DNA of 63,095 nt from Octopus sinensis (taxonomy: Eukaryota): NCBI RefSeq assembly GCF_006345805.1, contig NW_021831872.1:1-63095 (forward strand). Direction: 5' to 3'. Both the position numbers and the translations under genes were made by a program. This document shows, in pieces, positions 1 to 57,806 of the stretch (position 1 is its first letter; every line of letters begins with the position of its first letter). The notes beneath the pieces were generated by a model. The model was not told the DNA's origin and ran no database searches. It was given only the letters and a program-made list of their open reading frames with translations.

Positions 1-765
1 AGCCATGCCTATAGAGCTTATCCCGAACGGTTAGCGCTTCTCGGTAGCACCGCCAGGCCAGGGATCTCTGGAAGTTGTCTATAGGTCTCGGCCCGAAAGT
101 CGTTTCAAACAGGCGGGTCAGGTATTCCTCATCGACGCCCAGGTTCGCCACAAGTCGTCGTCGTACATCCCCTCCACTAATCCCTATAAATGGCTTTGGT
201 TGTATGAAGTCACTCAGGTCGACCCGGGACGGCAGAGTTGCTTGAGAGCAACGCGACACTCGCGGCCATTCGTCCTTCCTCGGCCTCTTTTTGATCCACG
301 ACTGCCGTTCGGTCATGGAGACGAGCTGCGGGAAACGCGTGCCTCACAAACGGCGACCACACCTGTTCACCATCGTCTACGAAGAGCCTGAGATGTCGCA
401 GTCTCAGCGCGTGTGTGCGCATTCATCACCATGGCATGCCCAGCCCTCCTTTTAACGGGTGTGTTGACAGCAAATGATCGCCTGACCATCGGGAACGCAC
501 CTTTCCACAAGAAGCGGAAGAGAATGCGTTCTAGTTTGGTGATGGTAGGGTCGGGACAAGTACGACGGTCAGGCGGTAGTAGATGATGGACGCGATGTAC
601 GTGTTCGCCACCTCCGCCCGACCTTTTAGGGACAGTTTCCTCTCGGCCCATTGCCGGGCGAGAGTGACCACCTACTCGTTATCTCGTTCCAGTTCTTCTC
701 CATTTGGAGGTCCGGACCGAACCAGACCCGAGCCAACTCAACGGGCGTCTGTCCAGCGTCCCAGA
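1..765 (-). mobile_element. Tx1-like (L1 clade) LINE ORF2 fragment, frameshifted, 5'-truncated at a (GATA)n tract, runs off the window start
   Basis: Manual minus-strand translation gives VWFGPDLQMEKNWNEITSRV..QWAERKLSLKGRAEVANTYIASIIYYRLTVV, then CPDPTITKLERILFRFLWKG and DNFQRSLAWRCYREALTVRDKLY. This is the post-RT/zf-RVT region typical of Tx1 ORF2. It is homologous to 5876-6180. Confidence 0.85.
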
Positions 766-5215: not shown

Positions 5216-6180
5216 ATCAAAATGGATCGTGGAAAGAAGCAAAAAAAAAATAATAAAAAGAAAGCTGATCAATAGAAATCGTGTATCACAGAAATATCAT
5301 GATAATGTAAAAGGGAAAACAGATTAGGTTTATCCGTGGAAGGAAAAGCCTACAGAAAAGACCACGGTAACCTCGGGCAATAATGTCATGCAAAAAACAC
5401 GTTACAGTAAATGACTCACTTTTATCCTTTCTTTTTCCAGTTCATAGGATTATGTTCATGGTGACTCCGTCATTCACACGTGCCATCCTTGCTAGATACC
5501 CACATCGTTTATTGAAACAGTCGCTAGACAAAACTCCCCTCTCTACGCTAACCTTCCTCTTCAAATGGTACTTGAAGAAGTTGCTGAGAGATTCACCAGA
5601 GAGGAAAGTGTTTGTCTCTAGACCTTCCAGACGCGTCCACCATACACATTCTTTCGCCATAGCCACAAGTACGATGAAAATGGCTCTTCCTTCCCGTTTC
5701 AAGGAAGGAGGCGTGACACTATTCACGATAGACTCGGTTGATAAACTGACTCGTCCCACACGCGATAGCAGTCATTCGAGATAGGCCCACGGGTCGTTGG
5801 ACACTGTACCAGTGCATGCAGAACGGTTTCGTCGCTCTGACCGCATCTCGGGCAGGTCGGCTTCGTGTTTCTCGAGCCCTGTCTATAGAGCTTATCATGA
5901 ACGGGTAGAGCTACTCGATAGCACTGCCAGGCCAGGGACCTCTGGAAGTTATCCATAGGTCCCGGCCCGTGGGTCGTCTTGAACAGGTAGATCAGATATT
6001 CCTCGTCGACGCCCAAGTTCGCCCCGAAATCGTCGTCGTACCTCCCCTGCACAAATCCCCTAAAGAATGCTTTGGTTGTGTTGCAGTCGCTCAAAGTCGA
6101 CCCGGGACGGCATAATTGCTCGAGAAAAATGCGACACTCGCGGTGCCATTCGCCCTTCTTCGGCCTCTTTTTGATCCACA
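5216..6180 (-). mobile_element. Tx1-like LINE 3' fragment (zf-RVT, ORF2 C-terminus and 3' UTR)
   Basis: ORF 5723-6202 contains DNFQRSLAWQCYRVALPVHDKLY..KPTCPRCGQSDETVLHALVQCP (zf-RVT). ORF 5442-5759 gives the C-terminus ..KRKVSVERGVLSSDCFNKR..ARVNDGVTMNIIL*. Confidence 0.9.
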
Positions 6181-6635
6181 GATAACTTTCTTTATTGGCC
6201 ACATAGGGCTGAACACAGAGGGTACAAATACAAATGTAGAGCTTTTCTTGTCGAAAATGAAAAAGAAAAAGAAAAAAAGAGCAGAAAAAAGTAAAGTTCC
6301 GCTCAAAAGCGTCGGGGAAAAAAAAGGCGATCGTGTATCACAGAAGAAATTTTTTAAATGTAAGAAGCAAGATTAGGCTTATCCGTGGAAAGAAAAGCCT
6401 ACAGAAAAGACCACGGTAATCTCAGGCAGGGAGGGAATAAACACATGAGAGCAAAGTGCTCTCTCTTTTCTTTTTCGATTTACAGGATCATGCTCAAAGT
6501 GGTTTCGTCGATCGCACGCACCATCTTTGTTACATTCACCCACCATTTTTTTTCAACTTTCACGAGACAAAACCTGCCTCTCTTCCTTTTCAAGTGGTAC
6601 TTGAAAAAGTTGATGAGTGATTGGCCTGAGAGGTA
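6181..6635 (-). mobile_element. Second Tx1-like 3'-end fragment, head-to-tail with 5216-6180
   Basis: gattagg(c/t)ttatccgtggaa..aaaagcctacagaaaagaccacggtaa and ttcaa(g/a)tggtacttgaa are shared with 5322-5590. Confidence 0.85.
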
Positions 6636-9634: not shown

Positions 9635-9697
9635 GGGCATATGGTATAGTGGTTAACAGCGTGGGCTACTAACCCCAAGATTCCGAGTTCGATTCCA
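9635..9697 (+). other. tRNA-like head (Pol III A and B boxes), SINE-type rather than a functional tRNA
   Basis: TGGTATAGTGG (A box), anticodon arm gtggg-ctactaa-cccca, GAGTTCGATTCC (B box); the 3' acceptor strand is missing. Confidence 0.65.
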
Positions 9698-9729
<32 letters not shown>

Positions 9730-9787: not shown

Positions 9788-9833
9788 GGCACCTGAAGAA
9801 GGCTGGAGGATATATCAGCCGAAACGTTGTGTT
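9788..9833 (+). ncRNA. Minimal type I hammerhead ribozyme (Penelope-type)
   Basis: Stem I GGCAC/GUGUU; core CUGAAGA plus an extra A; stem II GGCUG/CAGCC; GAAAC-GUU with palindromic AACGUU in place of stem III. Predicted cut after 9828. Confidence 0.7.
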
Positions 9834-11201: not shown

Positions 11202-11345
11202 CGAAGGGGTGCTGAAAAGTCACTGGCTTCGAGTAAAAGAAAATACGTTTCAGGTATCTTGGAGAAATTTCGAACCTGGGTTCTCAATCCTAAGGTATCT
11301 TTCGATGGTGTTGCTGTTGTTGTTGTTGTTATTATTATTATTAAA
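11202..11345. mobile_element. Mariner-MITE terminal fragment (11202-11247) abutting a partial minus-strand copy of the 9700-9790 repeat
   Basis: TA-cgaaggggtgctgaaaagt resembles the start of 54579. gaaatttcgaacctgg(g)ttctca is the reverse complement of tgagaagccaggttcgaaatttc at 9760-9782; this copy lacks the hammerhead. Confidence 0.6.
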
Positions 11346-12230
11346 CAGTTCCGCAAACATAGGATGAATTTGATCAGATAAAATGCTTAAATAGTCTTGA
11401 CTATTAATTCTGCCATGAAGGGAAAACATTAGACCAGCGCATTTCCCAGATATAGCCCCCCCCCCCCGATCATCAAAGATCCTCCTCCATGTTTAACAGT
11501 TGGAAGAAGGCAGTCTGGGTCAAATGCTTCTTTTGGCTGTCTCCACACGTATACTCAGCCGCTGGTCGAAAATAAGGTAAAGGATAACTCGTCCAAGGAA
11601 ATAATATTCTTTCACTTCTCTAGGGACCAATTCTGTATGTTTTTACTGCACTCTGAACGCTTTGCAACGTTTGGTTTTGAAAGTAGTGGTTGTTTGATAG
11701 CAGCCCTCCCGTGAAATCCGGCCTTGTGCAGCTCCCGGCCAACAGTGTTTGAAGAAAGTGGGTTCCCAAGGTGGTCATTGAGCTCTGCAGTAGTTTTGGG
11801 AGATGTACTTTTGTGATTCTTTCTAACAATTCGCGTAAGAGTCCGACGGTCCCTATCTGACAGTTTTGGTTTTCTTCTGGAGTTTTCTTTTGACAAGGAA
11901 GTTTTCTTCTCTTTCTCAAAGGCTGTTATTACTTTCAAGACAGTACTTCATGATACGCCAAACATTTCGGCTGTTTTCGTTACGCTAGCGCCTGCCATAC
12001 GAGCACCAAGAATTTGACCTCTTTCAAAGTCCGATAGATCTCTCATTTTAATGAATTTTAATTACCTTTTTCTGATATCTGAAAAGAAACAGCAATTTTA
12101 GACAAACATATTAAGCAACACTAATAATAAATTAAAACAATAAAAATAAACAGATTTTGACGATTTTAGAGATACTTCAAAATTATGATGCTATGATGCT
12201 AAGTATTTCCATTATTTTGTCCAACACCTA
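11345..12230 (-). mobile_element. Tc1-family transposon, decayed; 5' TIR, N-terminal HTH and part of the DDE domain
   Basis: MRDLSDFERGQILGARMAGASV.., RRKPKLSDRDRRTLTRIVRKNH..TVGRELHKAGFHGRAA, VWRQPKEAFDPDCLLPTVKHGGGS, LHGRINSQDYLSILSDQIHP; TIR-like ..ttttgtccaacacc-ta at the right end. Confidence 0.9.
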
Positions 12231-12510: not shown

Positions 12511-13444
12511 AATATGGATGTATATGAGTGTATACGACACGAAAATTTTATGGAAACTACAGATATTTTCAAACTCACATAAAAATAAATTTACGTAATA
12601 CGCTATGTGTTATGTAATTTTCTTCCTTCATGGCGACTACAATGAATATAAGCCAACTATCTTCAGACTTCGATATTTGGATATAACCCCATAAATTTAT
12701 TCAAGAATGCTAGAAATTCTATCTTATAAAGATTAAACTGTTTGAGATACTCTCTGGCATGACATAGTTTACATAACAAGCATTTGTTATTTCACAAGGC
12801 TTCATTATGAATATACATACGCACATACATACATTCGTACATATATGTGTGTGTGCGTGTGTGTATGTGTGCCTGTTTCTGTGTGTGTGTCTTTGTGTGT
12901 GTGTGTGTGTCTTTGTGTGTGTGAGTGTACGTGTGTGTATGTGCGTGTGTGTATATATAGTATGGAGAAAGATAGATATATAGACTTCACTATTCACTAT
13001 GAATATATATATATATATATATATATACATACATACATACATGCATTATATATATATGTATATATACATACATATATACATAAATGCACATATACATACA
13101 TAAATATATTTATATAAATATATATATATACACATATATACATAAATATATTACATATATATAATTAATTAATAAGGGTGAGAGAATTAGATACTAATTT
13201 AATAGATATTTATTCAACACCAAGTGGCCTAGTTGCTACGAGAAACCTGGATTATTATAATATTTTATACATATTACAATACTTTTACAAAACAAATATA
13301 AGAGAGTGGTCAATATATTGCTCACTCTAGCACCAGTTAATCCAAAAGGTTTCAACCACGAAGATACATGTTTCCCATGAAAGCCAGTACGACTGTTAGC
13401 TCACACGGACAGGCAAGTAAAAAATAACAAAAATACAGATTATT

Positions 13445-13522
13445 TTGGGACAATTGTTTCGCTATTAATGAATTAAATGTAATATTACTTACAAAAAAAT
13501 CCATTTGTAGCTCGTCAGCCAA
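13445..13522 (-). ncRNA. Type I hammerhead ribozyme, copy 1
   Basis: UUGG-CUGACGA-GCUA...UAGC-GAAAC-AAUU-GUC-CCAA on the minus strand. Confidence 0.85.
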
Positions 13523-13980
13523 GACTATCTGGATGAAATCCACTCAATCACACGCCAGATTGTACCATAACGATAAATACGCGTGTGGTTCAATTGATTA
13601 CATCCGACGTTATAATTCAAATGCCCCAACCAACAGCGCGCCAAACTTTCACGGAAAACAAATACAGCATTTAGAAATAAATGCAGCATAATTATAATAA
13701 TTAATAAGGGTGAGAGAGAATTAGATACTAATTTAATAGTATATTTATTCAACACCAAGTGGCCTAGTGCTACGAGAAACCTGGATTATTATAATATTTT
13801 ATAACATATTACAATACTTTTACAAAACAAATATAAGAGAGTGGTCAATATATTGCTCACTCTAGCACCAGTTAATCCAAAAGGTTTCAACCACGAAGAT
13901 ACATGTTTCCCATGAAAGCCAGTACGACTGTTAGCTCACACGGACAGGGCAAGTAAAAAATAACAAAAATACAGATTATT

Positions 13981-14058
13981 TTGGGACAATTGTTTCGCTA
14001 TTAATGAATTAAATGTAATATTACTTACAAAAAAATCCATTTGTAGCTCGTCAGCCAA
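13981..14058 (-). ncRNA. Type I hammerhead ribozyme, copy 2
   Basis: Identical motif, 536 bp from copy 1. Confidence 0.85.
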
Positions 14059-14114
14059 GACTATCTGGATGAAATCCACTCAATCACACGCCAGTGGATT
14101 TCATCCAGATAGTC

Positions 14115-14192
14115 TTGGCTGACGAGCTACAAATGGATTTTTTTGTAAGTAATATTACATTTAATTCATTAATAGCGAAACAATTGTCCCAA
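14115..14192 (+). ncRNA. Type I hammerhead ribozyme, copy 3
   Basis: TTGG 14115-18, CTGACGA 14119-25, stem II GCTA/TAGC, GAAA 14177-80, CAATTG, GTC 14186-88 (cut after 14188), CCAA 14189-92. Confidence 0.85.
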
Positions 14193-14646
14193 AATAATCT
14201 GTATTTTTGTTATTTTTTACTTGCCCTGTCCGTGTGAGCTAACAGTCGTACTGGCTTTCATGGGAAACATGTATCTTCGTGGTTGAAACCTTTTGGATTA
14301 ACTGGTGCTAGAGTGAGCAATATATTGACCACTCTCTTATATTTGTTTTGTAAAAGTATTGTAATATGTTATAAAATATTATAATAATCCAGGTTTTTCG
14401 TAGCACTAGGCCACTTGGTGTTGAATAAATATACTATTAAATTAGTATCTAATTCTCTCACCCTTATAATTAATTATAATTATGCTGCATTTATTTCTAA
14501 ATGCTGTATTTGTTTTCCGTGAAAGTTTGGCGCGCTGTTGGTTGGGGCATTGATTATAACGTCGGATGTAATCAATTGAACCACACGCGTATTTATCGTT
14601 ATGGTACAATCTGGCGTGTGATTGAGTGGATTTCATCCAGATAGTC

Positions 14647-14724
14647 TTGGCTGACGAGCTACAAATGGATTTTTTTGTAAGTAATATTACATTTAATTCA
14701 TTAATAGCGAAACAATTGTCCCAA
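14647..14724 (+). ncRNA. Type I hammerhead ribozyme, copy 4
   Basis: Identical motif; predicted cut after 14720. Confidence 0.85.
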
Positions 14725-15172
14725 AATAATCTGTATTTTTGTTATTTTTTACTTGCCCTGTCCGTGTGAGCTAACAGTCGTACTGGCTTTATGGGAAATT
14801 GTATCTTCGTGGTTGAAACCTTTTGGATTAACTGGTGCTAGAGTGAGCAATATATTGACCACTCTTTATATTTGTTTTGTAAAAGTATTGTAATATGTTA
14901 TAAAATATTATAATAATCCAGGTTTCTCGTAGCACTAGGCCACTTGGTGTTGAATAAATATACTATTATTAGTATCTAATTCTCTCACCTTATTAATTAA
15001 TTATAATTATGCTGCATTTATTTCTAAATGCTGTATTTGTTTTCCGTGAAAGTTTGGCGCGCTGTTGGTTGGGGCATTTGAATTATAACGTCGGATGTAA
15101 TCAATGAACCACATGCGCGTATTTATCGTTATGGTACAAGTGCGTGTGATTGAGTGATTCATCCAGATAGTC

Positions 15173-15250
15173 TTGGCTGACGAGCTACAAATGGATTTTT
15201 TTGTAAGTAATATTACATTTAATTCATTAATAGCGAAACAATTGTCCAAA
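15173..15250 (+). ncRNA. Type I hammerhead ribozyme, copy 5 (one C missing in stem I)
   Basis: Core intact; reads GTC-CAAA instead of GTC-CCAA, which may be a sequencing indel. Confidence 0.7.
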
Positions 15251-15436
15251 TAATCTGTTTTGTATATTTTTACTTGCCTGTGTGTAGTACCTGTGATAAC
15301 AGTCGTACTGGCTTTCATGGGAAACATGTATCTTCGGGTTGAAACCTTTTGGATTAACTGGTGCTAGAGTGAGCAATATATTGACCACTCTCTTATATTG
15401 TTTTATACATATATATATATACATATATATATACAT

Positions 15437-15471
<35 letters not shown>

Positions 15472-15474
15472 GCG

Positions 15475-15557
<83 letters not shown>

Positions 15558-16621: not shown

Positions 16622-17281
16622 GGCGGCGAGCTGGCAGAAATGATAGCACGCCGGGCGAAATGCGTAGCCGTATTTCGTCTACCGCTACGTTCTGAGTTCA
16701 AATTCCGCCTAGGTCAACTTTGCCTTTCACCCTTTCGGGGTCGATTAAATAAGTACCAGTTACGCACTGGGGACGATATAATCGACTTAAACCGTTTGTC
16801 TGTCCTTGTTTGTCCTCTTTGTGCTTAGCCCCTTGTGGGTAGTAAAGAAATAGGTATTTCGCCTGTTTTTACGTTCTGACTTCAAATTCCGCCGAGGTCG
16901 ACTTTGCTTTTCATCCTTTTGGGATCGATTAAATAAGTACCAGTTAAGCACTGGGGTCGATATAATCGACTTAATCCGTTTGTCTGTCCTTGTTTGTCGC
17001 CTCTCTGTGTCGCCTCTTGTGGGCAGTAGAGAAATAGGTATTTCGTCTGCCACTACGTTCTGAGTTCAAATTCCGCCGAGGTCGACTTTGCCTTTCATCC
17101 TTTCGGGGTTGATAAATTAAGTACCAGTTGCGCACTGGGATCGATGTAATCGACTTAATCCGTTTGTCTGTCCTTGTTTTCACCTCTGTGTGGCCCCTTG
17201 TGGGCAGTAAAGAAATAAGAAACTTTAGTATGCTGGGTGATATGCTTAGCGATATTTCGTCTGTCTTTACGTTCTGAGTTT
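16622..17281 (+). mobile_element. Head-to-tail cluster of family B tRNA-derived SINEs (one full, two 5'-truncated, one stub)
   Basis: ggcggcgagctggcagaa..gagttcaaattccgccgaggtcgactttgcctttcatcctttcggggtcga..gcactggggtcgat..ccccttgtggg(c/t)agtaaagaaata, repeated with a period of about 185 bp. Confidence 0.9.
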
Positions 17282-18050: not shown

Positions 18051-19613
18051 TGCTTGTAGCTATGTATATATGTAGGAATATACCATTAGACTTCCTTCTT
18101 CCGAATACGAAACTGATTAGAAATTGTAATTATACCCTTTTAAGCACCTGCCACTTACTCCCACCCTTCTACTGTGACCACTCGATATCCCATTTCAATA
18201 TTAACTACTTCTCCCGACCACTATCCACATCTCTACCCTAATTCAAATCCTGACCAAAGCAGTTTAATCCTTCTCATGGTGATTAATCGCAACCCACCCT
18301 TTCAAAGCAGCGAAAGAAACTTTAACCCTATTCATGGTTTTTATCTTTCAGTTTAAATAAGCCCTCATCAGTAAAATTGTTCTCAACAGTTTAACATTGC
18401 ACATTCTTTATTCAACCATTGTTTGCCTGTTTTTATGTATTTTGAAACATCTAACATTTAACTGTGTATGATGAGAAAAGCGAAACACGATACAAACGCA
18501 CTCAAAAACTTGAATCCTTTCATCAGTTGTCGACCAACCAATCATCACAATTTTGACACACGTTGTGCGCGTATGTGTGGGTGTGTACATATGTGTATGT
18601 TTATGTATGTCTTTATGTCTGCATATGTGCATCTGGGAATCTATCTCTGGAAGTGTATATGTATACATGTGCGTGTCAGTGTTTTTGTGCATGTGCTTAT
18701 GTGTGAGTGTGTGTGTGTGTTTGTGTGTACATATATGCGCGTGTGTGTGCGCGTGGGCATGTAATTCAATGCCTTGTTGAATTGGCAGAGATCTTTGGTT
18801 ACTTCTTTTGGTTCATTTATTTTTGTATTAAATCCGCTTTCTTTCACTGTTTATTTTCTTTTTTCTTTCTTTCTTCAGAATTTATTCACTCTGGGTATGA
18901 AGACACAACGAATAATTGTTGCTCAAACTCATTTAAAGTTTATCAAAAACATCGGTTAGAATAAATTATTCTAATTAGGTTTACAAAATTTCTTGACAAA
19001 GATGTAATTATGAATTATAGCTAACAATTAGTTCAAGTATGTGGTTTGGTATTACTCGAGTGTTTGGTTCCATACATTGCTTGGAATTATGTAACATTAG
19101 AATAAACGAAGCGACTCTTGCAGATTGTGAAACCAACCACTGCATTTCCATGAATTTCCACAGCAACATGAAATTACGAAAGTTATATCAACCTTGTTTA
19201 CGGAGTTAGTGAAGCTTGCTGCACATGTAACGTACACTCCTGCAAAGCAGGCTACTTCACAGTCGATCCAACAGATTCAAACAGACAGATATATGCACCT
19301 ACACAAACACACATACACACTACTACTCACAGATATATACGTGCAGAGACTCATAACTCACCTACGCATATACGAATACGCAGACACGAGCTAAAAGTGT
19401 GCCTGTCTATGTATTTGTGTATTTATATGCATCTATATGCATGTGTAAAAGGCAACAAGCTGCTACAAGGCTAGAAAAGCTAAGACCCAACAACATGTGT
19501 GTTCATAATATATATATGTATACTGCATATATACATATACATATATATATATACATATATGTCTATACATACATACATACATACATACATACATACATAC
19601 ATACATACATACA

Positions 19614-22541: not shown

Positions 22542-22772
22542 TATTTCTTTATTGCCCACAAGGGGCTAAACATAGAGGGGACAAACAAGGACTGACAAAG
22601 GGATTAAGTCGATTACATAGACTCCAGTGCGTAAGTGGTACTTAATTTGTCGACCCCGAAAGGATGAAAGGCAAAGTCGACCTCGGTGGAATTTGAACTC
22701 AGAACGTAACGGCAGACGAAATACCACTAAGCATTTCGCTCGGCGTGCTAACGTTTCTGCCAGCTCGCCACC
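22542..22772 (-). mobile_element. Family B SINE with a 15-bp TSD
   Basis: cttgactgatgtttc at 22526-22540 and 22776-22790. Confidence 0.9.
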
Positions 22773-24064
22773 TTTCTTGACTGATGTTTCAATTTGGCTC
22801 AGTAACCTCGTGATCCCAATATGGTTACATTCGTTTAATCAATGATCCTAAGATAAACTCTAAGGCTGTAATATGGCAGAGTCGTTAAAGCGTCCTATAC
22901 AATGCTCTGCGCTCTGAGTCTAAATCAGATCGAAGCTAACTCAGACCCGTCTCCAGACTTTGGTGTCTGGGGATGTTTCAGAATATTCTTGGTGGGCACT
23001 AATTTGTATTGCGGGAAGACTTTTGTAAATTGTATTTTCTTAATCTGAGGGTGCACCATTGAATAGTGCGGGTCCAATGCCATCTAGTGCCCCACACCAC
23101 CCTACCCACACTTAAATACAGGCATGAGTTAACTTTACCTTCTGAGACGATAAACAAGAATCACTCGAAGACGGTTGATTCTGGAAACCTTTAGAGCGTT
23201 GGAAGTGATGTCTTGTGATGTCTGCTTCGTCTCCCTGTGAAACTGTGTCTGGTTTACCTTACCTTGGACAACGATACCAAAAGTGGAGACATACATTAGG
23301 TCAGTCTTTAAAAATACAAGTACCGCCTAGGGCTTCGACTTGGGGGCGAACTTTCCTGGTGCAAATCCATAATCTTAGAAGACATGTTGAGGATCCCGGA
23401 TATAAGCACTCTGCTAACGACTATATAAGTACTAAACTCCCGGATATAAACACTAAACAACGACTGTAAAAGGAATTAACAAATTAACAAAGATTATATG
23501 GACGATTGCACTAAAAAACTATAGTAGTAAACACATGAAGTTATTTCTTTAAAGGACTGTCACCGTAAGAAGGCTTTTGATTATAGGTATATTTAATCAG
23601 AGTTAAGGTGGGATTAAACAAATCCACCACCAACAAAGAAAACAGCAGTAGTAATGAGCGAGGAAGAAGCTTCTGTGATGTCGCTTGAACTAAAAAATTC
23701 CAAGTCAGATCTCACTCAAATCACACTCTACTGTTTTAAAAATAGAATGATACATTTGATTATGTTGTCTTAAATAGAGTCAGCGTGTCCCAAGCAGGAC
23801 ATAAAAAGAGTTGGGCCAACCCAAGTTTTTTTTCTGTCCATGGTGTATAAATTTAACGGTGTGTCAGATGTACATGCAGCATATCAATAATTTAGCGGGT
23901 ACGTTAACTGTATGTACTATAATAGACTTAGTCTGTAGTACAATTTAAGTATCAAGCACACTTTCTTTAGCATATCAAAAATGAACTGGATTAGCTGTCA
24001 GTAACTCGTTGTTTATGCAAGTCGAGATTTCCGGCTTAGTGACTTCCTAACTGTAGTGACTATA

Positions 24065-24638: not shown

Positions 24639-25213
24639 TGCATAAATGCATGCGTGCACATACAATAGACTTGTGCGTGGTTTCTGGCAGGAGTTCTAAA
24701 TAGAAATGGAACCAGTTGAACCGATATTTCTCTTTCTGCTTACGGAAATGTGTCTTTTATTATTTCCCCCCATACTTCATCTTTTATTTGTGTCAGTCAT
24801 TTAGCTGCGGCCATGCTGGGACATCGCCTTAAAGAGTTTAGCCAAACAAATCCACCCACTACATGTTTTTTTTTAAGTGTGGTCTTATTCTTTCTGCTTT
24901 GCTGAATCACTAAGCTAAAGGCATGTAAACAAACCAATACCGGCTTTTATCACCACAAACAACAACAGCAAAAGCACCACTAACACTACCATCAATCAAG
25001 GGTTGCTAATTCTCCCTCAACTTAAATTGTACCATCTTAGAAAAGGAAGAACACATTGTATAATGTAGTTCTGTATAACTGTAATGAGTGGTGGTCACAG
25101 CCGAAGAGCTTTTGCACAAGACTATCAAACAGAATTGACCCAGGGCTGAACAACAACAATGCAACAAGACTAAGATCACTAACAGTAACACTGACACCAT
25201 CACCCTCACTACC

Positions 25214-25442
25214 TATTTCTTTACTACCCACAAGGGGCTAAACACAGAGGACAAACAAGGACAAACAAATGGATTAAGTCGATTACATCGACCCCAGTGC
25301 GTAACTGGTACTTATTTAATCGACCTCGAAAGGATGAAAGGCAAAGTTGACCTTGGCGGAATTTGAACTCAGAACGTAACGGCAGACGAAATACAACTAT
25401 GCATTTCGCCCAGTATGCTAACGTTTCTGCCAGCTCACTGCC
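25214..25442 (-). mobile_element. Family B SINE
   Basis: Full head-to-tail similarity to 16622. Confidence 0.9.
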
Positions 25443-26523: not shown

Positions 26524-26700
26524 TTCTGTCTACCACATTCACTTGCTATGCATTGGTCGGTCCGAAGCTCTAGAAAGACACGTTTGTGCAAGGTGCTGTG
26601 AAAAGGGAGTGAACTAGAAACAACGTACTTTCCTCCGCCTACAAAAAAAATCTTTGTTTTATTTGTCTCTCTTTTTCTTGCCACGCATTGGAGCTTATAC

Positions 26701-26917
26701 TATTTCTTTACTACCCACAAGGGGCTAAACACAGAGGGGACAAACGGATTAAGTCAATTATATTGACCCCAGTGCGTAACTGGTACTTATTTAATCGACC
26801 CCGAAAGGATGAAAGGCAAAGTCGACCTCGGCGGAATTTGAACTCAGAACATAACCGCAGGCGAAATACTGCTAAGAATTTCGCCCGGCGTGCTAACGAT
26901 TCTACCAGCTCGCCGCC
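26701..26917 (-). mobile_element. Family B SINE with a 15-bp TSD
   Basis: attggagcttatact at 26687-26701 and 26920-26934. Confidence 0.9.
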
Positions 26918-27193
26918 TTATTGGAGCTTATACTGCTTAATAACAACTTCAAGTGTAAAGTCCGCACTTTAAAATCGAAAACATGTGAAATTCGAAACGA
27001 AATAATCAGCATATCGAAATAGTAACCTAGATAGTGTTCACGTTTGAACCGCCCATGTATTTGATATCGCCTTCATTAAAGATAGGTATTACACACACAC
27101 AAACACAAGCACACACTCCACCACAAACACTCATAGTATAACTTATATGCATATATATATTAGAAGGCTTGGAGATGATGTACAGGTATTTTA

Positions 27194-31899: not shown

Positions 31900-32640
31900 A
31901 CGAGAGGTGTTCATTACAGATTTCCCCGACCCACTTTCCAAATAATTAGGCATAATTGTTAGTCCTTCTCTACATAGCCACCACCAACGGTGACAAACTT
32001 CTGCCATCGCTTTATGCAGCTGCGAAGAACTCGTCTGTAGAAGTAGGTAGGTTGTGTCTGGAGCCAAGACTTTACCTCGGAAATAAGTTCATCATCATCC
32101 GAAAAGTGCTTCCCCTTCAAAAAAGACTTCATGATTGGAAAGAGGTAGAAGTCAGAAGGGGGACGAAGAAGGATTTCATAGCTGCAGGAGTAAGCTTTCC
32201 TCTGGGCAGCATGCGCTTTGTGAACTGGGGTGTTGTCTCGGAGGAGGCGGTTCCTTTGGTCAGTACGCAACACCTCTCTAGATTGATGGCGTCCCATAAT
32301 TTCTGAAACAGAAACGCAGAATATACCCCGATAATCGTGGTGCCCTTTGCCAGAAAATCCATCATTACTACGCGCTGGTCTCAAAAGACTGAGGATCACT
32401 TTGCCTGCTGAGTGTTGGAAATGAGCCTTCTTTAGAGGTGATGTGTTATCATGCTTCCATTGCTTCTATTGGACTTTAGGCTCAGGAACATAGTGGCAGG
32501 CCCATGTTTCGTCCTGTGTGATAAGTCTGCCGAAAATGTCCTCCCCACTTTCCTGGCACATTGCCAAAAGAGCCTAGAAGAAATTGACTCGTTTCTGCTT
32601 CTGAAAAGGTGTGAGACAACTCCTGCATGTGCGTGCGTGT
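31900..32640 (-). mobile_element. Mariner transposase relic with one TIR
   Basis: RLITQDETWACHYVPEPK, SAGKVIL, MMDFLAKGTTI, PSDFYLFPIMKSFLKGKHFSDDDELISEV..RWQKFVTVGGGYVEKD*; TIR cgagaggtgttca at about 31901. Confidence 0.9.
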
Positions 32641-40041: not shown

Positions 40042-40998
40042 ATATATATATACACACATATATATATATGTATGTATGTATGTATGTGTGTATATGTGTA
40101 TGCATGTATGTGTGTGTGTGTGCGTGTCTGTGCTTGTGATTGTCCTCCACCACTGCTTGACAACGAATGTTGGTTTGTTACATCCTGTCACCTAGTGGTT
40201 TGACAAAGGAAACAGATAGAATAAGTACAATGCTTACAAAAATAAAACTGGAGTTGATTCATTAAACTACAATTCTTCAAGGTATTGCCCCAGCATGGCC
40301 ACAGACCAATGGCTGGAAAAAAGCAGAAGAATAAAAGAATACATTCTCTGCTTTGGTCTTATGTTCAAGGCATGAGAAAGCTTGAGTTTACATGAGAAGG
40401 CCTAACAGACCTGGTAGAAACAGCAGCCAAATCTCCCTCAAATCACACCTTACTGTCTTATGTATGTATATATATATGAGCCAATGAGGGGGACCTCTAC
40501 ATGTACCTAGACCTGGTAGAAATAGCAGCAAAATTTCCCCCAAATCACACCTTACTGTCTTATCTATGTATATATGTATGTATGAGCCTATGAGGGAGAC
40601 CCCTACATGGCAGCTAGACATGGTAGAAATAGCAGCCAAATCTCCCTCAAATCACACCTTACTGTCTTATGTATGTATATATATATATACATACATGTGT
40701 GTATAGATGAATATATAAATACATTAAATATCTATATACACTTTTGGGCGATCTTTCTGCTTCTTAGAGATAACTTTAGATGTTAATTCGTCCTAAATAA
40801 CTTTGTATGAATTGAAAAAGTAAATGAATTGAAATTCTAAAAGAAAGGAATTTGTTTACATACATGTGTAAAATGGCAAATGTTTGTGCAGTTGTCGATG
40901 GAACTGGAAATGATGTATATAATGAATAGTCCTTCTTCTTGTGAATATTAATTTGATTAATATGAACTGAAAACCAGTGGTGTAGCATAGGTGATCTT

Positions 40999-43681: not shown

Positions 43682-45637
43682 TATATATATAGTTACAGAG
43701 ATGTACTGCATAGCAAGTGACTTGATCTGAGATCGTGTGCTGGAACGAAAACAGTTGCAGCGTTGAAGGTGTTTATAAGCCATTTAAGAAACACACAAAA
43801 ACCGTTAGATTCACTTCAACATTTAATTTAATTTGTCAAAATATTTTCGTCGCTTTGAGACCGCGACCTGTTAGCACGATTTTTTGTCAGTGAACAGGTC
43901 GCGGTCTCAAAGCGAGGAAAAATATTTTGGCAAATTAAATTTAAATGTTGAAGTGAATCTAACGGTTTTTGTGTGTTTCTTAAATGGCTTACAAACACCT
44001 TCCACGCTGCAATATATATACACACATATATATATATGTATGTATGTATGTATGTGTGTATATGTGTATGCATGTATGTGTGTGTGTGTGCGTGTCTGTG
44101 CTTGTGATTGTCCTCCACCACTGCTTGACAACGAATGTTGGTTTGTTTACATCCCTGTCACCTAGTGGTTTGACAAAGGAAACAGATAGATAAGTACAAT
44201 GCTTACAAAAAAATAAAACTGGAGTTGATTCATTAAACTACAATTCTTCAAGGTATTGCCCCAGCATGGCCACAGACCAATGGCTGGAAAAAGCAGAAGA
44301 ATAAAAGAATACATTCTCTGCTTTGGTCTTATGTTCAAGGCATGAGAAAGCTTGAGTTTACATGAGAAGGCCTAACAGACCTGGTAGAAACAGCAGCACA
44401 AATCTCCCTCAAATCACACCTTACTGTCTTATGTATGTATATAGATATGAGCCAATGAGGGGGACCTCTACATGGTACCTAGACCTGGTAGAAATAGCAG
44501 CCAAATTTCCCCCAAATCACACCTTACTGTCTTATCTATGTATATATGTATGTATGAGCCTATGAGGGAGACCCCTACATGGCAGCTAGACATGGTAGAA
44601 ATAGCAGCAAATCTCCCTCAAATCACACCTTAATGTCTTATATATGTATGTATATATACATACCTAGATACACATACATTGATAAATATCTATATACACT
44701 TTTGGGCGATCTTTCTGCTTCTTTGAGAGATAACTTTAGATGTTATATTCGTCCTAAATAACTTTGTATGAATTGAAAAATTAAATGAATTGAAATTCTA
44801 AAAGAAAGGAATTGTTTACATACATGTGTAAAATGGCAAATGTTTGTGCAGTTGTCCGATGAGAACTGATGTATTATAATGAACAGTCCTTCTTCTTGTG
44901 AATATTAATTGATTATATGAACTGAAAACCAGTGGTGTAGCATAGGTGATCTTCTAGCAAAAAGGAGACCAGTCTGAATGGGTCGTCCCTGTCACACACA
45001 CACAACACACACACACACACACACACCCTCACACACACGCACACACACACACACACAACAGACCACACGCAGACACACGTTAGCTTACAATGTCTGTCAA
45101 CAATTACACTGTCGTATTATTAGCGTGTCTATGTGTCTAATGAGGAATGGGAGTAATAGGCAGAGTAAAGCTTCAAAGTGAAATGTTTAAAATATGAGTT
45201 TTCTCGAATTTTGTCTTAATTGGGGGTGAAATTGAAAGAAATTTTGTATGGCATGAACCAATGGAAGTTCTTGAAAATCATAGGTAAAGTCTAATTGAAG
45301 AACTGTGTGAGGAGTAAATCATTATGTATTTTTGTTTCTGTTTGCTGCTTTCTTTTTAAATATTACATCTAGTTTCACTTTATTCGTTGCACACTGTGTG
45401 TGTGCGTTTGCGTGTGCTGTAAACCAGACGAAGAAAAGCATTTGAACATACACACCAGAATGTGAGTTTTCTGTAAATTTTGCTTAATTGGAGTTTAAAT
45501 TTTAAAAACTGGACCTGGCATGACCCGATGCATTCTACTCTAAAAATGCTAGGTACATTGTAATTGAAGAAATCCTATATTTTAGATTTCTATAACTTAC
45601 AAAGGGAGGCAGATAAAATCTGCCTTTTATAATAAGA
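43558..45637. repeat. Duplicate of 39610-41701 (contains a family G hairpin at 43698-44012 and H2 at 44954-45637)
   Basis: Colinear and nearly identical; differences are mostly indels. Confidence 0.95.
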
Positions 45638-47137
45638 CTAGCAGTATCGCCCGGCGTTGCTCGGGTTGTAAGGGAAATAACTATATAAGCATTTTAGAGA
45701 GTTATAGCCAAAAAATAGCAAAAAAATGCATAAAAATTGAAAAAAAATTAAAGAGGAAATTTTTCTTTAATCGTTGAACACATCGTAGATATTTTTAGAG
45801 AGTTACTTCCCTTATATAAAAGCGAAAAAAAATGCATTAAAATGGAAAAATATGATGGTAATTTTTTTTTAAATCGTAGACTCATCGTAGACGCGCGCTA
45901 ATACCCAGAAGGGCTCGTTTTGTTTTTCTGGGTAACTTTCTGTAAAATTATTAAAATTTTGTTCAAACATCGCTATAGAAAATGGGTTATTAGCTAATAT
46001 TCAATGGGTGTACAACAAAATTTTACGTAGAGAATTTGTTTTATGGGTAACTTTCTGTAAAATTATTAAAATTTTGTTCAAACATCGCTATAGGAAAATG
46101 GGTTATTAGCTAATATCCAATGGTGGTATACAACAAAAAATTTACGATAGGGATTAGTGTTATTCTGGGTAACTTTCTGTAAAATTATTAAAATTTTGTT
46201 CAAACATCGCTATAGAAAATGGGTTATTAGCTATATTCAATTGGGTATAAACAAATTTTACGATAGAATTTGTTATTCTGGGTAACTTCTGTAAAATTAT
46301 TAAAATTTTGTTCAAACATCGCTATAGAAAATGAGTTATTAGCTAATATTCAATTGGGTATACAACAAAATTTTACGATAGAATTTGTTATTCTGGGTAA
46401 CTTTCTGTAAAATATTTAAATTTGTTCAAACATCGCTATAGAAAATGAGTTATTAGCTAATATTCAATTGGGTATACAACAAAATTTTACGATAGAATTT
46501 GTTATTATGGGTAACTTTCTGATACCCATAATAATATGTATGGCAAAATAGGCCTTAATTTCATTTAAGTTGTGGGAATAACAAACTATCCTTTCTTTCG
46601 TTTTGTTTACGTTTAGCGTAACGTTCGTTTCTGCCGTAATGATTTCAAATGGGCTCATTCGAAAAAGTAAATAGAAATAGTGTAAGGCTTTACTCTTCTG
46701 GGAAAGTCTGTGGCTTGGTGCAGTTTCTTCAGAAAATCACCGAAAGAAACAGTTTTTAAATTTTCACTCTCCATTCAGGTGCTAATTCGTGTTCTTAATC
46801 GCTGTCGGATTCACTGTTTTCACTTTATAGCTGCCAACTTGCAAAGACAAAGGAGGAGAATGGTGATAGCGTGAGTGAAACAATTCGCTCCCTTTGTGTG
46901 TGTTGCGTTTGCGTGTGGTGTAAACCAGACTAAGAAAAGCATTTGACACACACACCAGATGTGAGTTTTCTGTAACTTTTGCTTAATTGGAGTTTAAATT
47001 TTAAAAACTGGACCTGGCATGACCGATGCATTGTACTCTTAAAACTGCTAGTGAAATTGTAATTGAAGAAATCCTATATTGTAGATTTGTATAACTCCCA
47101 AGGGAGGCAGATAAAATCTGCCTTTTATAATAAGAGA
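45638..47137 (-). mobile_element. Composite Helitron: H2-type 5' end, internal satellite, H1-type 3' end
   Basis: TCTCTTATTATAAAAGGCAG at 47137 and hairpin plus CTAG at 45638; absent from the first duplicate copy. Confidence 0.6.
45928..46525. repeat. ~115-120-bp tandem repeat, about 5 copies
   Basis: gggtaactttctgtaaaattattaaaattttgttcaaacatcgctatagaaaatg.. recurs at about 45928, 46043, 46165, 46278, 46393 and 46508. Confidence 0.95.
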
Positions 47138-55160: not shown

Positions 55161-57640
55161 CTCCGGACATGTTCAAATGTTTGATTTTTGTTCAAAGGTT
55201 AACTGCGAGCAAAGATGCAGAAATACATGCCCGGATATTGACAACGCTAGAGCAAGACCAGAATTTGACCCTGCAGCCAGTGGCAGAGGAATGTCAGAGA
55301 ATTATTAATCTACGACATTATGTAAATAAAAGATTACTCTCACATGCATGCATGTTGACCTGTAACAGATAAAAATTTGGAAAACGAAGATCAAGACCCA
55401 ATCCATGCTACGGGTGCGGAGGTCTACATTTTAGCAATAACCGTCTGTTTAAACATTTAAAATGTTTTAACTGTCAAAAAATCGGTCATAAAAGCTCACA
55501 TTGCATAATGAAAAAATGGTCGATCGCAAAGAATTCTGGGAAGGTTTTCTCAACACAAAGTCTAGGCGAGGTTCACAAAGCTAAGTTTGTGGATATGAAA
55601 TTCAATAATGTGAACGTGAAGTTAGAGCAAGATACAGGCAGTGATATTGCAACTACTAACACCGACACATGGAGAAAATAGGAAAGCCTTCATTAATGGA
55701 ATCTTCAAAAATTGGGAAAGGTGTCTCAGAAAAATAAATTACATTTTGGGGGCGAAATGATAACTGAGGTTACATTTCGAAGTAAAACCTTGAAAGCAAA
55801 AGTGTTCGTGTTAAACAATGCAACAAAATTGTTCGGTACTGACTGGATGGAATTGTTAATTTATGGGACATCCCCATAAATCTGTTCTGTAAAAATATAC
55901 GTAAACACACCAACATCGGCTGTCAAGTGATAGTGAAGGGGACACACACAGACGAATTGAAAGAAAATATTTTTCCTGAAGTTCTATCCGATAGCGCTGT
56001 GCACCAAGACAAAGCCGTGTTTTCAAATATAAGAAAAGACTATACAAGTATTTAAACAAAACAAATAGTACCCTTCGCAGCGATGAAGCAAGTCAATGAA
56101 GAATTAGAGAGGTTAGAAAAAATTGGAGTTATCCAAAAAGTGGAATATTCTAAATGGGCAGCACCAACTGTGTATATTAAGAAAAAGAATAATAAAATCA
56201 GTGTGCCCTGATTTTTCCACTAGTTTAAACGAATTTCTTAAAACGTGCCACTATCTGCTACTTACCCCGGGGGATATTTTTGCGAAGTTAAACTGTGGAA
56301 AGATATTTAGATCTCTCTAATGCGTACCTACAAATTAAAGTAGACGATGGATGCTCGAAATACCTAACAGTCAACAGTCATAACGGACTGTATAAATATA
56401 ACAGGTTACCATTTGGTTTAAAAGTCGCACCAGCGATTTTTCAACAGATTATAGATGCAATCTTCGATCCTGTAGTACGGTATAGGAGCAGTAATACTAC
56501 GTAAATATATAGATGGTAACACGAAGGCGGTGGTTCATGCCTCATGTTCTCTGATATAATAAAAAACAATTATAGTCAATCGATAAAGAAGTTCTAGCGA
56601 TCATTTTTGCGGTGAAAAAATTTCGCAAACTTTTTCACGGTAGAAATTTTCAGCCACTAACTGATCACCGACCGTTATTAGCGATATTTGGGGCGAAAAA
56701 AAGAATTCCTACCTATACTGCTAATAGCTTAAAGCGTTGGGCGGCGATATTATTGAACTAGAAATTAGATCATGCAGATAGTCTATCAAGACTGATTTAA
56801 AAAAACACGGAACCATTCGAAGATACTGTGATTGCCACTTCGAGCGCGTAAAATGAAATTAAAAATGTTTTGTGTAACGTCATTCGTGAACTGCCAGTTA
56901 CGTTACCAGACATAAAATCAAAGTCGGAGAACAACAAATTCATTATAAAAAGAAAGAAACATTGAAGGTCAAAGAAAATAAAAATTTGTGAAACACAAAT
57001 ACTAATCATTTCTCACTGTGCGACAATGTGTTGATGTATTCACAAAGAGTTATAGTGCTGACCGCACTACAAAAGCATTTATTAAAGGATTTTCATATTG
57101 GTCACCCTGAGATTTCCAGAATGGAATCACTTATGAGAAGCTATGTATATTGGCCTATAATGGACCGTGGCATTGAAGAGTCGGTGAAATACTGCAGAGG
57201 TTGTGCCGTTGCAGCCAAGTCACCACCAGTAAAATTCTAACAGTGGCCTAAAACCGATAGACCATGGATTAGGCTTCATATAGACTTTACTGGACCAGTA
57301 AATGGCGCATATTACCTGATTGTAGTAGATAGTTATACTAAATGGTCGGAAATATGTAGATGTAGGAAACCAGCCTCCACGGTAACAATAGAATTTCTTT
57401 GTGAACTCTTTGCAAAATATGGTGTCCCGGACACAATAGTATCCGATAACGGTATGCAGTCTACAGCATGTAAGTTTAAAAGTTTTTGCAAAATGTACAC
57501 TATTGAACACATCTCTACGCCGCCTTATAACTCAAGATCGAAAGGGCAAGCGAAACGGTTTGTGGATACATTTAAAGCCTTAAAGAAATCAAGAAACGAG
57601 CTGGTCGATGACGCAGCATTGACACAATTGCTCAGGATGT
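55159..57640 (+). mobile_element. Decayed Ty3/Gypsy gag-pol (zinc knuckle, protease, RT, RNase H, integrase); RT catalytic segment deleted; no LTRs seen
   Basis: CFNCQKIGHKSSHC; EQDTGSDI; SKWAAPTV..DFSTSLN..LDLSNAYLQI..YNRLPFGLKVAPAIFQQIID; DKEVLAIIFAVKKF..LTDHRPLLAIFG; HIGHP..MRSYVYWP..CRGC; RLHIDFTGP..VVDSYTKWSE..YGVPDTIVSDNG. Confidence 0.95.
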
Positions 57641-57806
57641 TAAGGCTTTCTATTTCTCCCGCGTTCGTCTGCTAGCCGAAAGGCTCTTCCTCTAATTTAT
57701 TTTGTATATGTATAATTATTCCCCACCACCACCGTTGTATAGCTGAAAAGCGTTTTTTCTTTTGTATATGTAAAATGTTTTTACTGTGCACTTGTATTAT
57801 TATTAC

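What the first reader, a model, noticed from the sequence alone, without database searches (positions are those of the whole stretch)
13161..15404. Retrozyme-like array: ~530-bp non-coding unit with five hammerhead ribozymes
Seen: every unit carries UUGG-CUGACGA-GCUA...UAGC-GAAAC-AAUU-GUC-CCAA, with all catalytic-core bases canonical. Copies lie at 13445-13522(-), 13981-14058(-), 14115-14192, 14647-14724 and 15173-15250(+); the last lacks one stem I base. There is no RT or endonuclease ORF in or next to the array. Established: minimal type I hammerheads with a palindromic stem III occur in Penelope-like element terminal repeats and in metazoan retrozymes, cleave as dimers from tandem copies, and can release monomers that circularise. 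Inference: a transcript through either block would self-cleave at successive GUC sites into ~530-nt monomers that could be ligated into circular RNA and copied by a Penelope RT in trans. This would be a non-autonomous ribozyme retroelement family in a cephalopod, possibly undescribed.
Basis: partly seen in the sequence, partly recalled or inferred. Interest (0 to 1): 0.92.

Follow-up and report, generated by a model that had tools for sequence, protein, structure and literature searches.

The report
Hammerhead ribozyme tandem repeat (retrozyme-like)
A 2.2-kb non-coding repeat in a probable cephalopod genome carries five copies of a textbook self-cutting hammerhead RNA motif and looks like an ordinary member of the known animal "retrozyme" class, which has not been written up for cephalopods.

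Summary
Window 13161-15404 is an array of about 4.2 non-coding units of 526-536 bp. Two hammerhead copies lie on the minus strand and three on the plus strand. The five 78-nt type I hammerhead motifs are identical, except that the last has lost one helix I base.

A structural descriptor gave no hit in 300 shuffles of the window. Rfam Hammerhead_1 aligns end to end (27.4 bits, E 3e-5 in a 121-nt search). It misses the gathering score of 34 because helix II carries a 39-nt insert.

The units are AT-rich (33% GC) and strongly self-paired as circles (z about -6). No domain-bearing ORF was found within 10 kb.

The two blocks meet 5'-to-5' at a 2-nt microhomology. Both outer ends are 3' ends in ribozyme sense, inside one split (TA)n microsatellite. 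This is the tandem-plus-inverted layout described for Penelope-like element (PLE) insertions.

Best reading: a non-LTR retrozyme, meaning a non-autonomous PLE-dependent element. It is a new member of a known kind.

Not shown: cleavage, transcripts, RNA circles, further copies, or a partner PLE. No relative was reachable in any collection.

The parts
13161..14094 (-). Minus-strand block: 1.75 units (partial unit 13161-13448, full monomer 13449-13984, 5' partial 13985-14094) with two hammerheads
   Evidence: Alignment of units; repeat families D6, D7, I1-I5
14093..15404 (+). Plus-strand block: 2.46 units (5' partial 14093-14188, monomers 14189-14720 and 14721-15246, diverged 3' partial 15247-15404) with three hammerheads
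13445..13522 (-). Hammerhead copy 1; predicted cleavage after the C at 13449 (between 13449 and 13448)
13981..14058 (-). Hammerhead copy 2; predicted cleavage after the C at 13985
14115..14192 (+). Hammerhead copy 3; predicted cleavage after 14188. Helix I extends to 14106-14201 (11 bp with two 1x1 mismatches). Helix II spans 14126-14176, a 51-nt imperfect hairpin
14647..14724 (+). Hammerhead copy 4; predicted cleavage after 14720
15173..15250 (+). Hammerhead copy 5; the core is intact, but a 1-nt deletion in the 3' strand of helix I (CCCAA to CCAA) probably impairs it
   Evidence: fails the strict descriptor
14081..14094 (.). Head-to-head junction of the two blocks. A 12-nt spacer (14081-14092) separates 367-nt arms that are 100% complementary. 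The AG at 14093-14094 is shared by both blocks (2-nt microhomology). The junction is 96 and 110 nt upstream of the nearest cleavage sites, so it is not at a cleaved RNA 5' end
   Evidence: I1, I3, D5
13003..13163 (.). Left flank: (AT)n/(CATA)n microsatellite abutting the 3' end (ribozyme sense) of the minus block
15405..15475 (.). Right flank: (TA)n/(CATA)n microsatellite abutting the 3' end of the plus block, followed by (ATAG)n to 15557. Joining the two flanks gives one continuous microsatellite

Best explanation
The array is an insertion of a non-autonomous, hammerhead-bearing retroelement of the metazoan non-LTR retrozyme type, which is thought to derive from and depend on Penelope-like elements (PLEs).

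Shown here:
- Each unit of about 530 nt has a complete type I hammerhead.
- Helix III is too short to be stable alone but is palindromic (ACAAUUGU), so two copies can form an 8-bp helix.
- The units are non-coding, AT-rich and strongly self-paired.
- The array is tandem plus inverted, with both ribozyme-sense 3' ends facing outward into one split (TA)n microsatellite.

Inferred:
1. A transcript running through a block in ribozyme sense folds two neighbouring hammerheads into a dimer.
2. It cuts after GUC, at 14188, 14720 and 15246 on the plus strand and at 13985 and 13449 on the minus strand.
3. This releases monomers of 526-536 nt with 5'-OH and 2',3'-cyclic phosphate ends held together by helix I.
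4. A host RtcB-type tRNA ligase closes them into circles.
5. A PLE reverse transcriptase/GIY-YIG endonuclease supplied in trans nicks a (TA)n target, primes on an AU-rich stretch of the RNA and copies the circle or multimer more than once round, giving tandem units.
6. A second priming event, or a snap-back of the cDNA, gives the inverted 5'-truncated copy.

This particular copy may or may not still be transcribed.
For: - Motif and statistics: 0 of 300 shuffles; RF00163, full model, E 3e-5.
- Structure: helices I, II and III form under core constraints at -19.0 kcal/mol, against an MFE of -24.6. The active dimer with an intermolecular 8-bp helix III is at -49.2, against -53.0.
- Unit properties match the published retrozyme definition (PMC7229834; size range 51-972 bp in the 2026 preprint). 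These are tandem head-to-tail units, 33% GC, circular MFE -145.5 with z about -6, and no Pfam domain in unit ORFs.
- Insertion anatomy matches PLE descriptions (PMC8557442): partial tandems, an adjacent inverted 5'-truncated copy and a microsatellite target. Here the 5' ends meet at a 2-nt microhomology and both 3' ends lie in one (TA)n.
- PMC4209133 reports paired PLE hammerheads 100-700 bp apart on opposite strands and proposes circles as templates for more-than-unit reverse transcription.
- PLEs are reported in cephalopod genomes (PMC6962438; PMC8557442).
Against: - Only one locus is known. The unit has no other copy in the 63-kb window. No relative turned up in DNA pattern scans or through unit ORFs. 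So there is no covariation, no copy number and no evidence of mobility beyond the anatomy.
- The Rfam score is below the gathering threshold.
- The MFE fold pairs GACGA of the core with UUGUC, an inactive competitor 4-6 kcal/mol more stable than the active fold.
- The self-pairing z-score is similar on both strands, so it does not identify the functional strand.
- (AT)n covers about 4% of this window, so the microsatellite target is weak evidence.
- No PLE is present in the window.
- No target-site duplication can be read in a microsatellite.
Confidence: 0.68

Rival explanations
1. The unit is not a separate family. It is the pseudo-LTR or terminal region of an autonomous Penelope-like element, present here as a tandem of internally deleted or 5'-truncated copies.
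For: PLE pLTRs carry hammerheads, and PLE insertions are heavily 5'-truncated, partly tandem and often inverted. In Xenopus, retrozyme consensus sequences match PLE termini. The layout here is the PLE layout.
Against: The repeat period is a constant 526-536 bp with no trace of RT or GIY-YIG coding sequence in or near the array. A tandem of full PLEs would have a period of about 3 kb. No PLE reference from this genome was reachable for comparison.
Confidence: 0.15
2. It is an inert local tandem duplication, a small satellite that carries a relic hammerhead. In this reading it was amplified and inverted by DNA-level events such as unequal exchange, replication slippage or fold-back repair, and no RNA intermediate is acting today.
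For: Only 4.2 units at a single locus are known. The terminal partial unit is decayed to about 85% identity and its hammerhead has a broken helix I. The window is dense in tandem repeats and segmental duplications.
Against: Four hammerheads are identical and intact while the rest of the units differ by 1-3%. Both outer ends are 3' ends in ribozyme sense, and the blocks join at a microhomology. Target-primed reverse transcription predicts this orientation, whereas DNA duplication does not require it. The unit matches the retrozyme definition point by point.
Confidence: 0.12
3. The inverted half is an assembly artefact, for example a chimeric long read folded at a missed adapter. The real locus would then be a simple one-orientation tandem array.
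For: The arms are 100% complementary over 367 nt, separated by only 12 nt. Many differences between units are 1-2-nt indels in homopolymer or AT runs, as long-read errors would be.
Against: The two arms differ in length (934 versus 1312 bp). They end at different unit positions and are flanked by different unique sequence, so the locus is not a mirrored contig end. Inverted adjacent copies are the expected PLE structure.
Confidence: 0.05

Closest known systems
Metazoan non-LTR retrozymes (Cervera and de la Pena 2020, PMC7229834; coral, mussel, axolotl)
   Same: Type I hammerhead once per unit. Head-to-tail non-coding tandem units with no LTR. GC below 50%. A strongly self-paired predicted circle. 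Co-existence with PLEs is proposed.
   Different: The unit of about 530 bp is larger than the 170-400 nt reported for invertebrates, though within the 51-972 bp range of the 2026 preprint. Helix II is a 51-nt extended hairpin instead of 4 bp plus a loop, so the usual loop 1/loop 2 contact cannot form in the usual way. The array is half inverted. No expression data exist.
Amphibian satellite 2 / axolotl HHR_Amex1 retrozyme (PMC7229834)
   Same: Helix III is reduced to a single pair beyond A15.1-U16.1, capped by a palindromic tetraloop. This predicts poor monomer cleavage and efficient cleavage as a dimer from tandem copies.
   Different: The amphibian motif keeps the canonical 4-bp helix II and the conserved loop-loop contacts. 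Its units are 330-350 bp and number up to about 10^5 copies.
Minimal hammerheads in pseudo-LTRs of Penelope-like elements (PMC4209133)
   Same: Palindromic 15.2-16.2 positions and loop 3. A longer-than-usual helix II and a G10.1-C11.1 pair. Motifs are found close together on opposite strands. The insertion architecture is shared (PMC8557442).
   Different: There is no unpaired base between A9 and G10.1. A real, though minimal, helix III hairpin is present. No RT/EN ORF lies between the repeats.
Hammerhead-bearing satellites and SINEs of other invertebrates (cave cricket pDo500, Schistosoma Sm-alpha; cited in PMC4209133; details from my own knowledge)
   Same: Non-coding repeats of a few hundred bp, each with a type I hammerhead. 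pDo500 is about 500 bp, like this unit.
   Different: Those are high-copy families with demonstrated transcripts and cleavage. Here there is one locus and no expression evidence.
Plant LTR retrozymes (PMC4918200)
   Same: Non-autonomous elements in which a hammerhead processes the transcript into circular RNA.
   Different: The plant elements have type III hammerheads inside LTRs, with a PBS and PPT, and are mobilised by Gypsy RT. None of these features applies here.

Membership tests
Hammerhead ribozyme, type I (Rfam RF00163) | Conserved core C3-U4-G5-A6-N7-G8-A9, G12-A13-A14, A15.1-U16.1 and H17 | tested here: met
   CUGACGA ... GAAA ... U-C is present in all five copies. Every core column aligns in the RF00163 alignment.
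Hammerhead ribozyme, type I (Rfam RF00163) | Three helices around the core with helix I open, and a G10.1-C11.1 closing pair | tested here: met
   Helix I is 4 bp, extendable to 11 bp. Helix II is GCUA/UAGC plus an 8-bp and a 5-bp extension. Helix III is C-G plus an AAUU loop.
Hammerhead ribozyme, type I (Rfam RF00163) | Score at or above the Rfam gathering threshold (34 bits) | tested here: not met
   The score is 27.4 bits, with no hit in the larger searches. The shortfall comes from a 39-nt insertion in loop II, not from core mismatches.
Hammerhead ribozyme, type I (Rfam RF00163) | Compensatory changes in the helices among homologues | tested here: inconclusive
   The five copies are identical, and no relatives were found.
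Hammerhead ribozyme, type I (Rfam RF00163) | Site-specific self-cleavage after H17 | not testable with these tools
   This needs in vitro transcription of monomer and dimer constructs.
Metazoan non-LTR retrozyme | Head-to-tail tandem units of a few hundred bp, each with one type I hammerhead | tested here: met
   Spacings are 532, 526 and 536 bp. This exceeds the 150-450 bp of PMC7229834 but lies inside the 51-972 bp range.
Metazoan non-LTR retrozyme | Non-coding, no LTR, GC below 50% | tested here: met
   Unit ORFs are at most 118 aa with no Pfam hit and no protein relatives. GC is 33%.
Metazoan non-LTR retrozyme | Monomer predicted to form a stable, highly self-paired circle | tested here: met
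   Circular MFE is -140 to -146 kcal/mol, 66% of bases are paired, and z is -5.9 to -6.6. The antisense strand is similar (z -4.0 to -5.9).
Metazoan non-LTR retrozyme | Multi-copy family dispersed in the genome | tested here: inconclusive
   There is no second locus in the window. The source genome is not searchable with these tools.
Metazoan non-LTR retrozyme | Expressed as linear and circular RNA of unit length | not testable with these tools
   No transcriptome data are reachable for non-coding sequence.
Penelope-like element (autonomous) | ORF with a telomerase-like RT and a GIY-YIG endonuclease between the repeats | tested here: not met
   The 34 stop-free segments scanned showed no RVT_1 or GIY-YIG near the array. 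The only RT signals are a LINE zf-RVT at 5726-6337 and a Gypsy RT at 56292-56501.
Penelope-like element (insertion architecture) | Partial tandem plus an adjacent inverted 5'-truncated copy, with a microsatellite target | tested here: met
   The blocks meet 5'-to-5' at 14093/14094 and both 3' ends lie in (TA)n, as described in PMC8557442. The chance of landing in (AT)n is about 0.04-0.07.
Plant LTR retrozyme | Type III hammerheads within LTRs, with PBS and PPT | tested here: not met
   The hammerhead is type I (helix I open), and the repeats are whole units, not LTRs flanking a body.

The most novel reading that the evidence does not exclude
The locus is a fossil of the integration step itself. 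In this reading a retrozyme RNA, either a circle or a multimer, was copied more than once round by a PLE enzyme primed in a (TA)n nick and then inverted by a second priming or a snap-back. That would be direct structural evidence, in a phylum where retrozymes are undescribed, that PLE machinery mobilises retrozymes.

Its hammerhead would also represent a long-helix-II subclass that Rfam thresholds miss. Censuses such as the 235 Hammerhead_1 hits in the giant squid would then undercount cephalopod ribozymes. A read-through transcript would in addition fold into a duplex of about 0.9 kb, a natural substrate for the very active cephalopod ADAR or small-RNA pathways.
Probability: 0.3. Interest if true: 0.6.

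Novelty: new member of a known kind. Interest (0 to 1): 0.4.

Why it matters
If the family is real and expressed, cephalopods join corals, mussels and amphibians as animals that make abundant ribozyme-derived circular RNAs.

The locus also shows a retrozyme with the tandem-plus-inverted, microsatellite-targeted layout that is the signature of Penelope-like elements. This bears on a current question, the subject of a 2026 preprint, of which enzyme mobilises animal retrozymes.

In practice, the motif is invisible to a standard Rfam scan at the gathering threshold because of its long helix II. Genome annotations that rely on that threshold will miss this class.

It would not change the general picture of hammerhead biology.

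Tried and rejected
1. Rfam at the gathering threshold on the whole window and at E<=10 on 2.6 kb gave no hammerhead hit. The hits there (MIR4208, mir-297 and similar) only reflect the central palindrome and the microsatellites. A 121-nt search did recover RF00163.

2. I looked for other copies through spurious ORFs. An exact look-up of 10 unit ORFs, two word-index protein searches and a full HMMER search of 1.84 billion representatives all came back empty.

3. DNA pattern scans for the hammerhead, with a fixed and then a free helix II, found nothing in metagenome and viral contigs. These collections probably hold no cephalopod DNA, so this says little.

4. BLASTN of the unit against the rest of the window and against one ENA contig (L001) of unidentified origin, fetched through a relative of the window's Gypsy integrase, gave only chance matches.

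5. I tested whether strand asymmetry in folding marks the functional strand. The raw MFE is much lower in ribozyme sense (-145 versus -111), but each strand's own shuffles differ equally, so z-scores are similar. I dropped the argument.

6. I tested for a mirror pattern of variants between the two arms, which would separate snap-back copying from independent priming. The variants are mostly private 1-2-nt indels and give no clean answer.

7. A relaxed descriptor found a second hammerhead-like motif at 9788-9833. It is probably chance.

8. ARAGORN found no tRNA-like head in the unit.

Full report
**What is there**

Five 78-nt segments read UUGG-CUGACGA-GCUA-(43 nt)-UAGC-GAAAC-AAUU-GUC-CCAA. They lie at 13445-13522(-), 13981-14058(-), 14115-14192(+), 14647-14724(+) and 15173-15250(+). 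Four are identical. The fifth has lost one C after the GUC, which breaks the second pair of helix I.

In standard hammerhead numbering the motif has:
- the core C3-A9 (CUGACGA), G12-A14, A15.1-U16.1 and C17;
- helix II closed by G10.1-C11.1;
- helix III made of one C-G pair beyond A15.1-U16.1, capped by AAUU;
- an open helix I of UUGG/CCAA, which makes it type I.

Helix I extends to 11 pairs with two 1x1 mismatches (14106-14201). Helix II is a 51-nt imperfect hairpin of 4, 8 and 5 pairs, at -12.6 kcal/mol.

**Is it more than chance?**

The bare core pattern is expected about 0.9 times per window and gives one unrelated extra match at 18291-18371. A descriptor that also demands helices I and II of at least 4 bp, and a helix III that is either a short hairpin or a palindromic insert, finds four of the five copies. 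It finds nothing in 300 dinucleotide-preserving shuffles of the whole window.

Rfam's Hammerhead_1 model is silent at the gathering threshold and in a 2.6-kb search at E<=10. When only 14095-14215 is searched, it aligns over its whole length (1-45) to 14113-14194 at 27.4 bits, E 3e-5. The gathering score is 34 bits. The deficit comes from a 39-nt insertion in loop II, and every core column matches.

The five copies are one motif in a repeated unit, not five independent occurrences.

**The unit and the array**

Cleavage-to-cleavage monomers are 532 nt (14189-14720) and 526 nt (14721-15246) on the plus strand, and 536 nt (13984 down to 13449) on the minus strand. They are 97-99% identical and differ mostly by 1-2-nt indels. 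The final partial unit, 15247-15404, is only about 85% identical.

The unit is 33% GC. Stop-free segments reach 118 aa at most. They have no Pfam domain and no relatives among 5.8 billion clusters or 1.84 billion representatives.

As a circle, the monomer folds to -140 to -146 kcal/mol with two thirds of its bases paired, at z -5.9 to -6.6 against shuffles. The complementary strand gives z -4.0 to -5.9. The self-pairing is therefore real but does not identify a strand.

**Orientation and ends**

The array is not a simple tandem. A minus-strand block (13161-14094) and a plus-strand block (14093-15404) meet head to head. The arms are 100% complementary over 367 nt with a 12-nt spacer, and the AG at 14093-14094 belongs to both blocks.

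The junction lies 96 and 110 nt upstream of the nearest cleavage sites, so it is not the 5' end of a cleaved RNA. Both outer ends are 3' ends in ribozyme sense. They stop at different, AU-rich unit positions and abut (TA)n/(CATA)n repeats. Joining the flanks in a script gives one continuous microsatellite.

This layout has three parts: partial tandem copies, an adjacent inverted 5'-truncated copy, and a microsatellite target. It is the structure described for Penelope-like element (PLE) insertions (PMC8557442). PLE hammerheads have also been reported 100-700 bp apart on opposite strands (PMC4209133).

The target evidence is weak on its own, because (AT)n covers about 4% of this window. No target-site duplication can be read in a microsatellite.

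**Surroundings**

I scanned 34 stop-free segments against Pfam. They covered the unit and most longer, non-repetitive frames from about 3 to 27 kb. None showed an RT or endonuclease domain near the array. The window does carry:
- a LINE zf-RVT tail (5726-6337, minus strand);
- a Tc1 HTH (11615-11947, minus strand);
- a degenerate Gypsy element (55373-57672).

The unit has no other copy in the window.

The best named relatives of the Gypsy integrase are Octopus bimaculoides proteins at about 60% identity. A cephalopod origin is therefore plausible but not proven, and the species is unknown.

**How it most likely works**

Shown: the motif, the palindromic helix III, the non-coding self-paired unit and the insertion anatomy.

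Inferred from established hammerhead and retrozyme biology (PMC7229834; PMC4209133):
1. A ribozyme-sense transcript through a block pairs the ACAAUUGU segments of two neighbouring hammerheads into an 8-bp helix III.
2. It cleaves after each GUC.
3. The monomers, whose ends are held by helix I, are closed by a tRNA ligase.
4. A PLE RT/EN supplied in trans copies the circle or multimer into a (TA)n nick.

Energetically, the active monomer fold (-19.0 kcal/mol) and the active dimer (-49.2) lie 4-6 kcal/mol above competing folds in which GACGA of the core pairs with UUGUC. This is usual for such motifs but leaves activity to be shown.

The outward-facing 3' ends are what target-primed reverse transcription of the ribozyme-sense RNA predicts, with either twin priming or snap-back synthesis.

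**Comparison and novelty**

Non-LTR retrozymes are described in cnidarians, molluscs (mussel), arthropods, amphibians and others (PMC7229834). A 2026 preprint extends unit lengths to 51-972 bp and argues that they derive from PLE termini.

No paper in the searchable library links retrozymes or characterised hammerheads to cephalopods. The giant squid genome paper only lists 235 Rfam Hammerhead_1 hits.

The finding is therefore a new member of a known kind. It has three modest peculiarities: a long helix II that defeats the Rfam threshold, a unit at the large end of the invertebrate range, and a half-inverted array.

**Limits**

No homologous copy could be reached, so covariation, copy number and the relation to a specific PLE are untested. 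Expression, cleavage and circles cannot be addressed with these tools. The palindrome and the small indels should be checked against raw reads.

Noticed in passing
window 9788-9833 (+): A second, different hammerhead-like motif in the PLE 'min-HHR' layout: GGCAC-CUGAAGA-A(bulge)-GGCUGG..UCAGCC-GAAA-CG-UU-GUGUU. Only a relaxed descriptor finds it, and that descriptor gives 0.22 chance hits per window. There is no Rfam hit. The only related copy (11249-11343, minus strand, 85% identical) diverges right after CCUGAA. It is probably chance.
   Followed up: partly
window 16670-17217; also about 22569-22842, 25139-25442, 26613-26969 and 9640-9700: tRNA-like SINE-type units with GGTTCGA/GAGTTCAAATTCC T-loop-like boxes, once as a 184-bp x3 tandem. 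ARAGORN calls no tRNA.
   Followed up: no
window about 39.8-41.1 kb versus 43.8-45.1 kb; also about 42.6-43.2 versus 47.9-48.5 kb: Segmental duplications. Each copy of the first pair contains a 107-bp x2.7 tandem repeat (40407-40686 and 44377-44657), and the translated segments are near-identical.
   Followed up: no
window 45919-46521: A 114-bp satellite of 5.2 copies at 91% match.
   Followed up: no
window 55373-57672 (+): A degenerate Gypsy-type LTR retrotransposon: zf-CCHC, RVT_1, Integrase_H2C2 and rve, in separate broken frames. Its best named relatives are in Octopus bimaculoides at about 60% identity.
   Followed up: partly
window 2-343 (-), 5726-6337 (-), 11253-11947 (-), 31962-32465 (-): Two similar stop-free segments: 5726-6337 has a LINE-type zf-RVT hit, while 2-343 has no Pfam hit. 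11615-11947 has a Tc1-type HTH_Tnp_Tc3_2 hit. 31962-32465 looks like a mariner transposase by eye but has no Pfam hit.
   Followed up: partly
window 15247-15310: The roughly 60 nt after the last cleavage site are much more diverged (clustered substitutions and indels) than any other part of the array. This could be real decay or local assembly error.
   Followed up: no
whole window: Very high microsatellite density: 157 TRF rows, mostly (AT)n, (TG)n, (ATAC)n, (ATAG)n and (TC)n. (AT)n alone covers about 4%.
   Followed up: no
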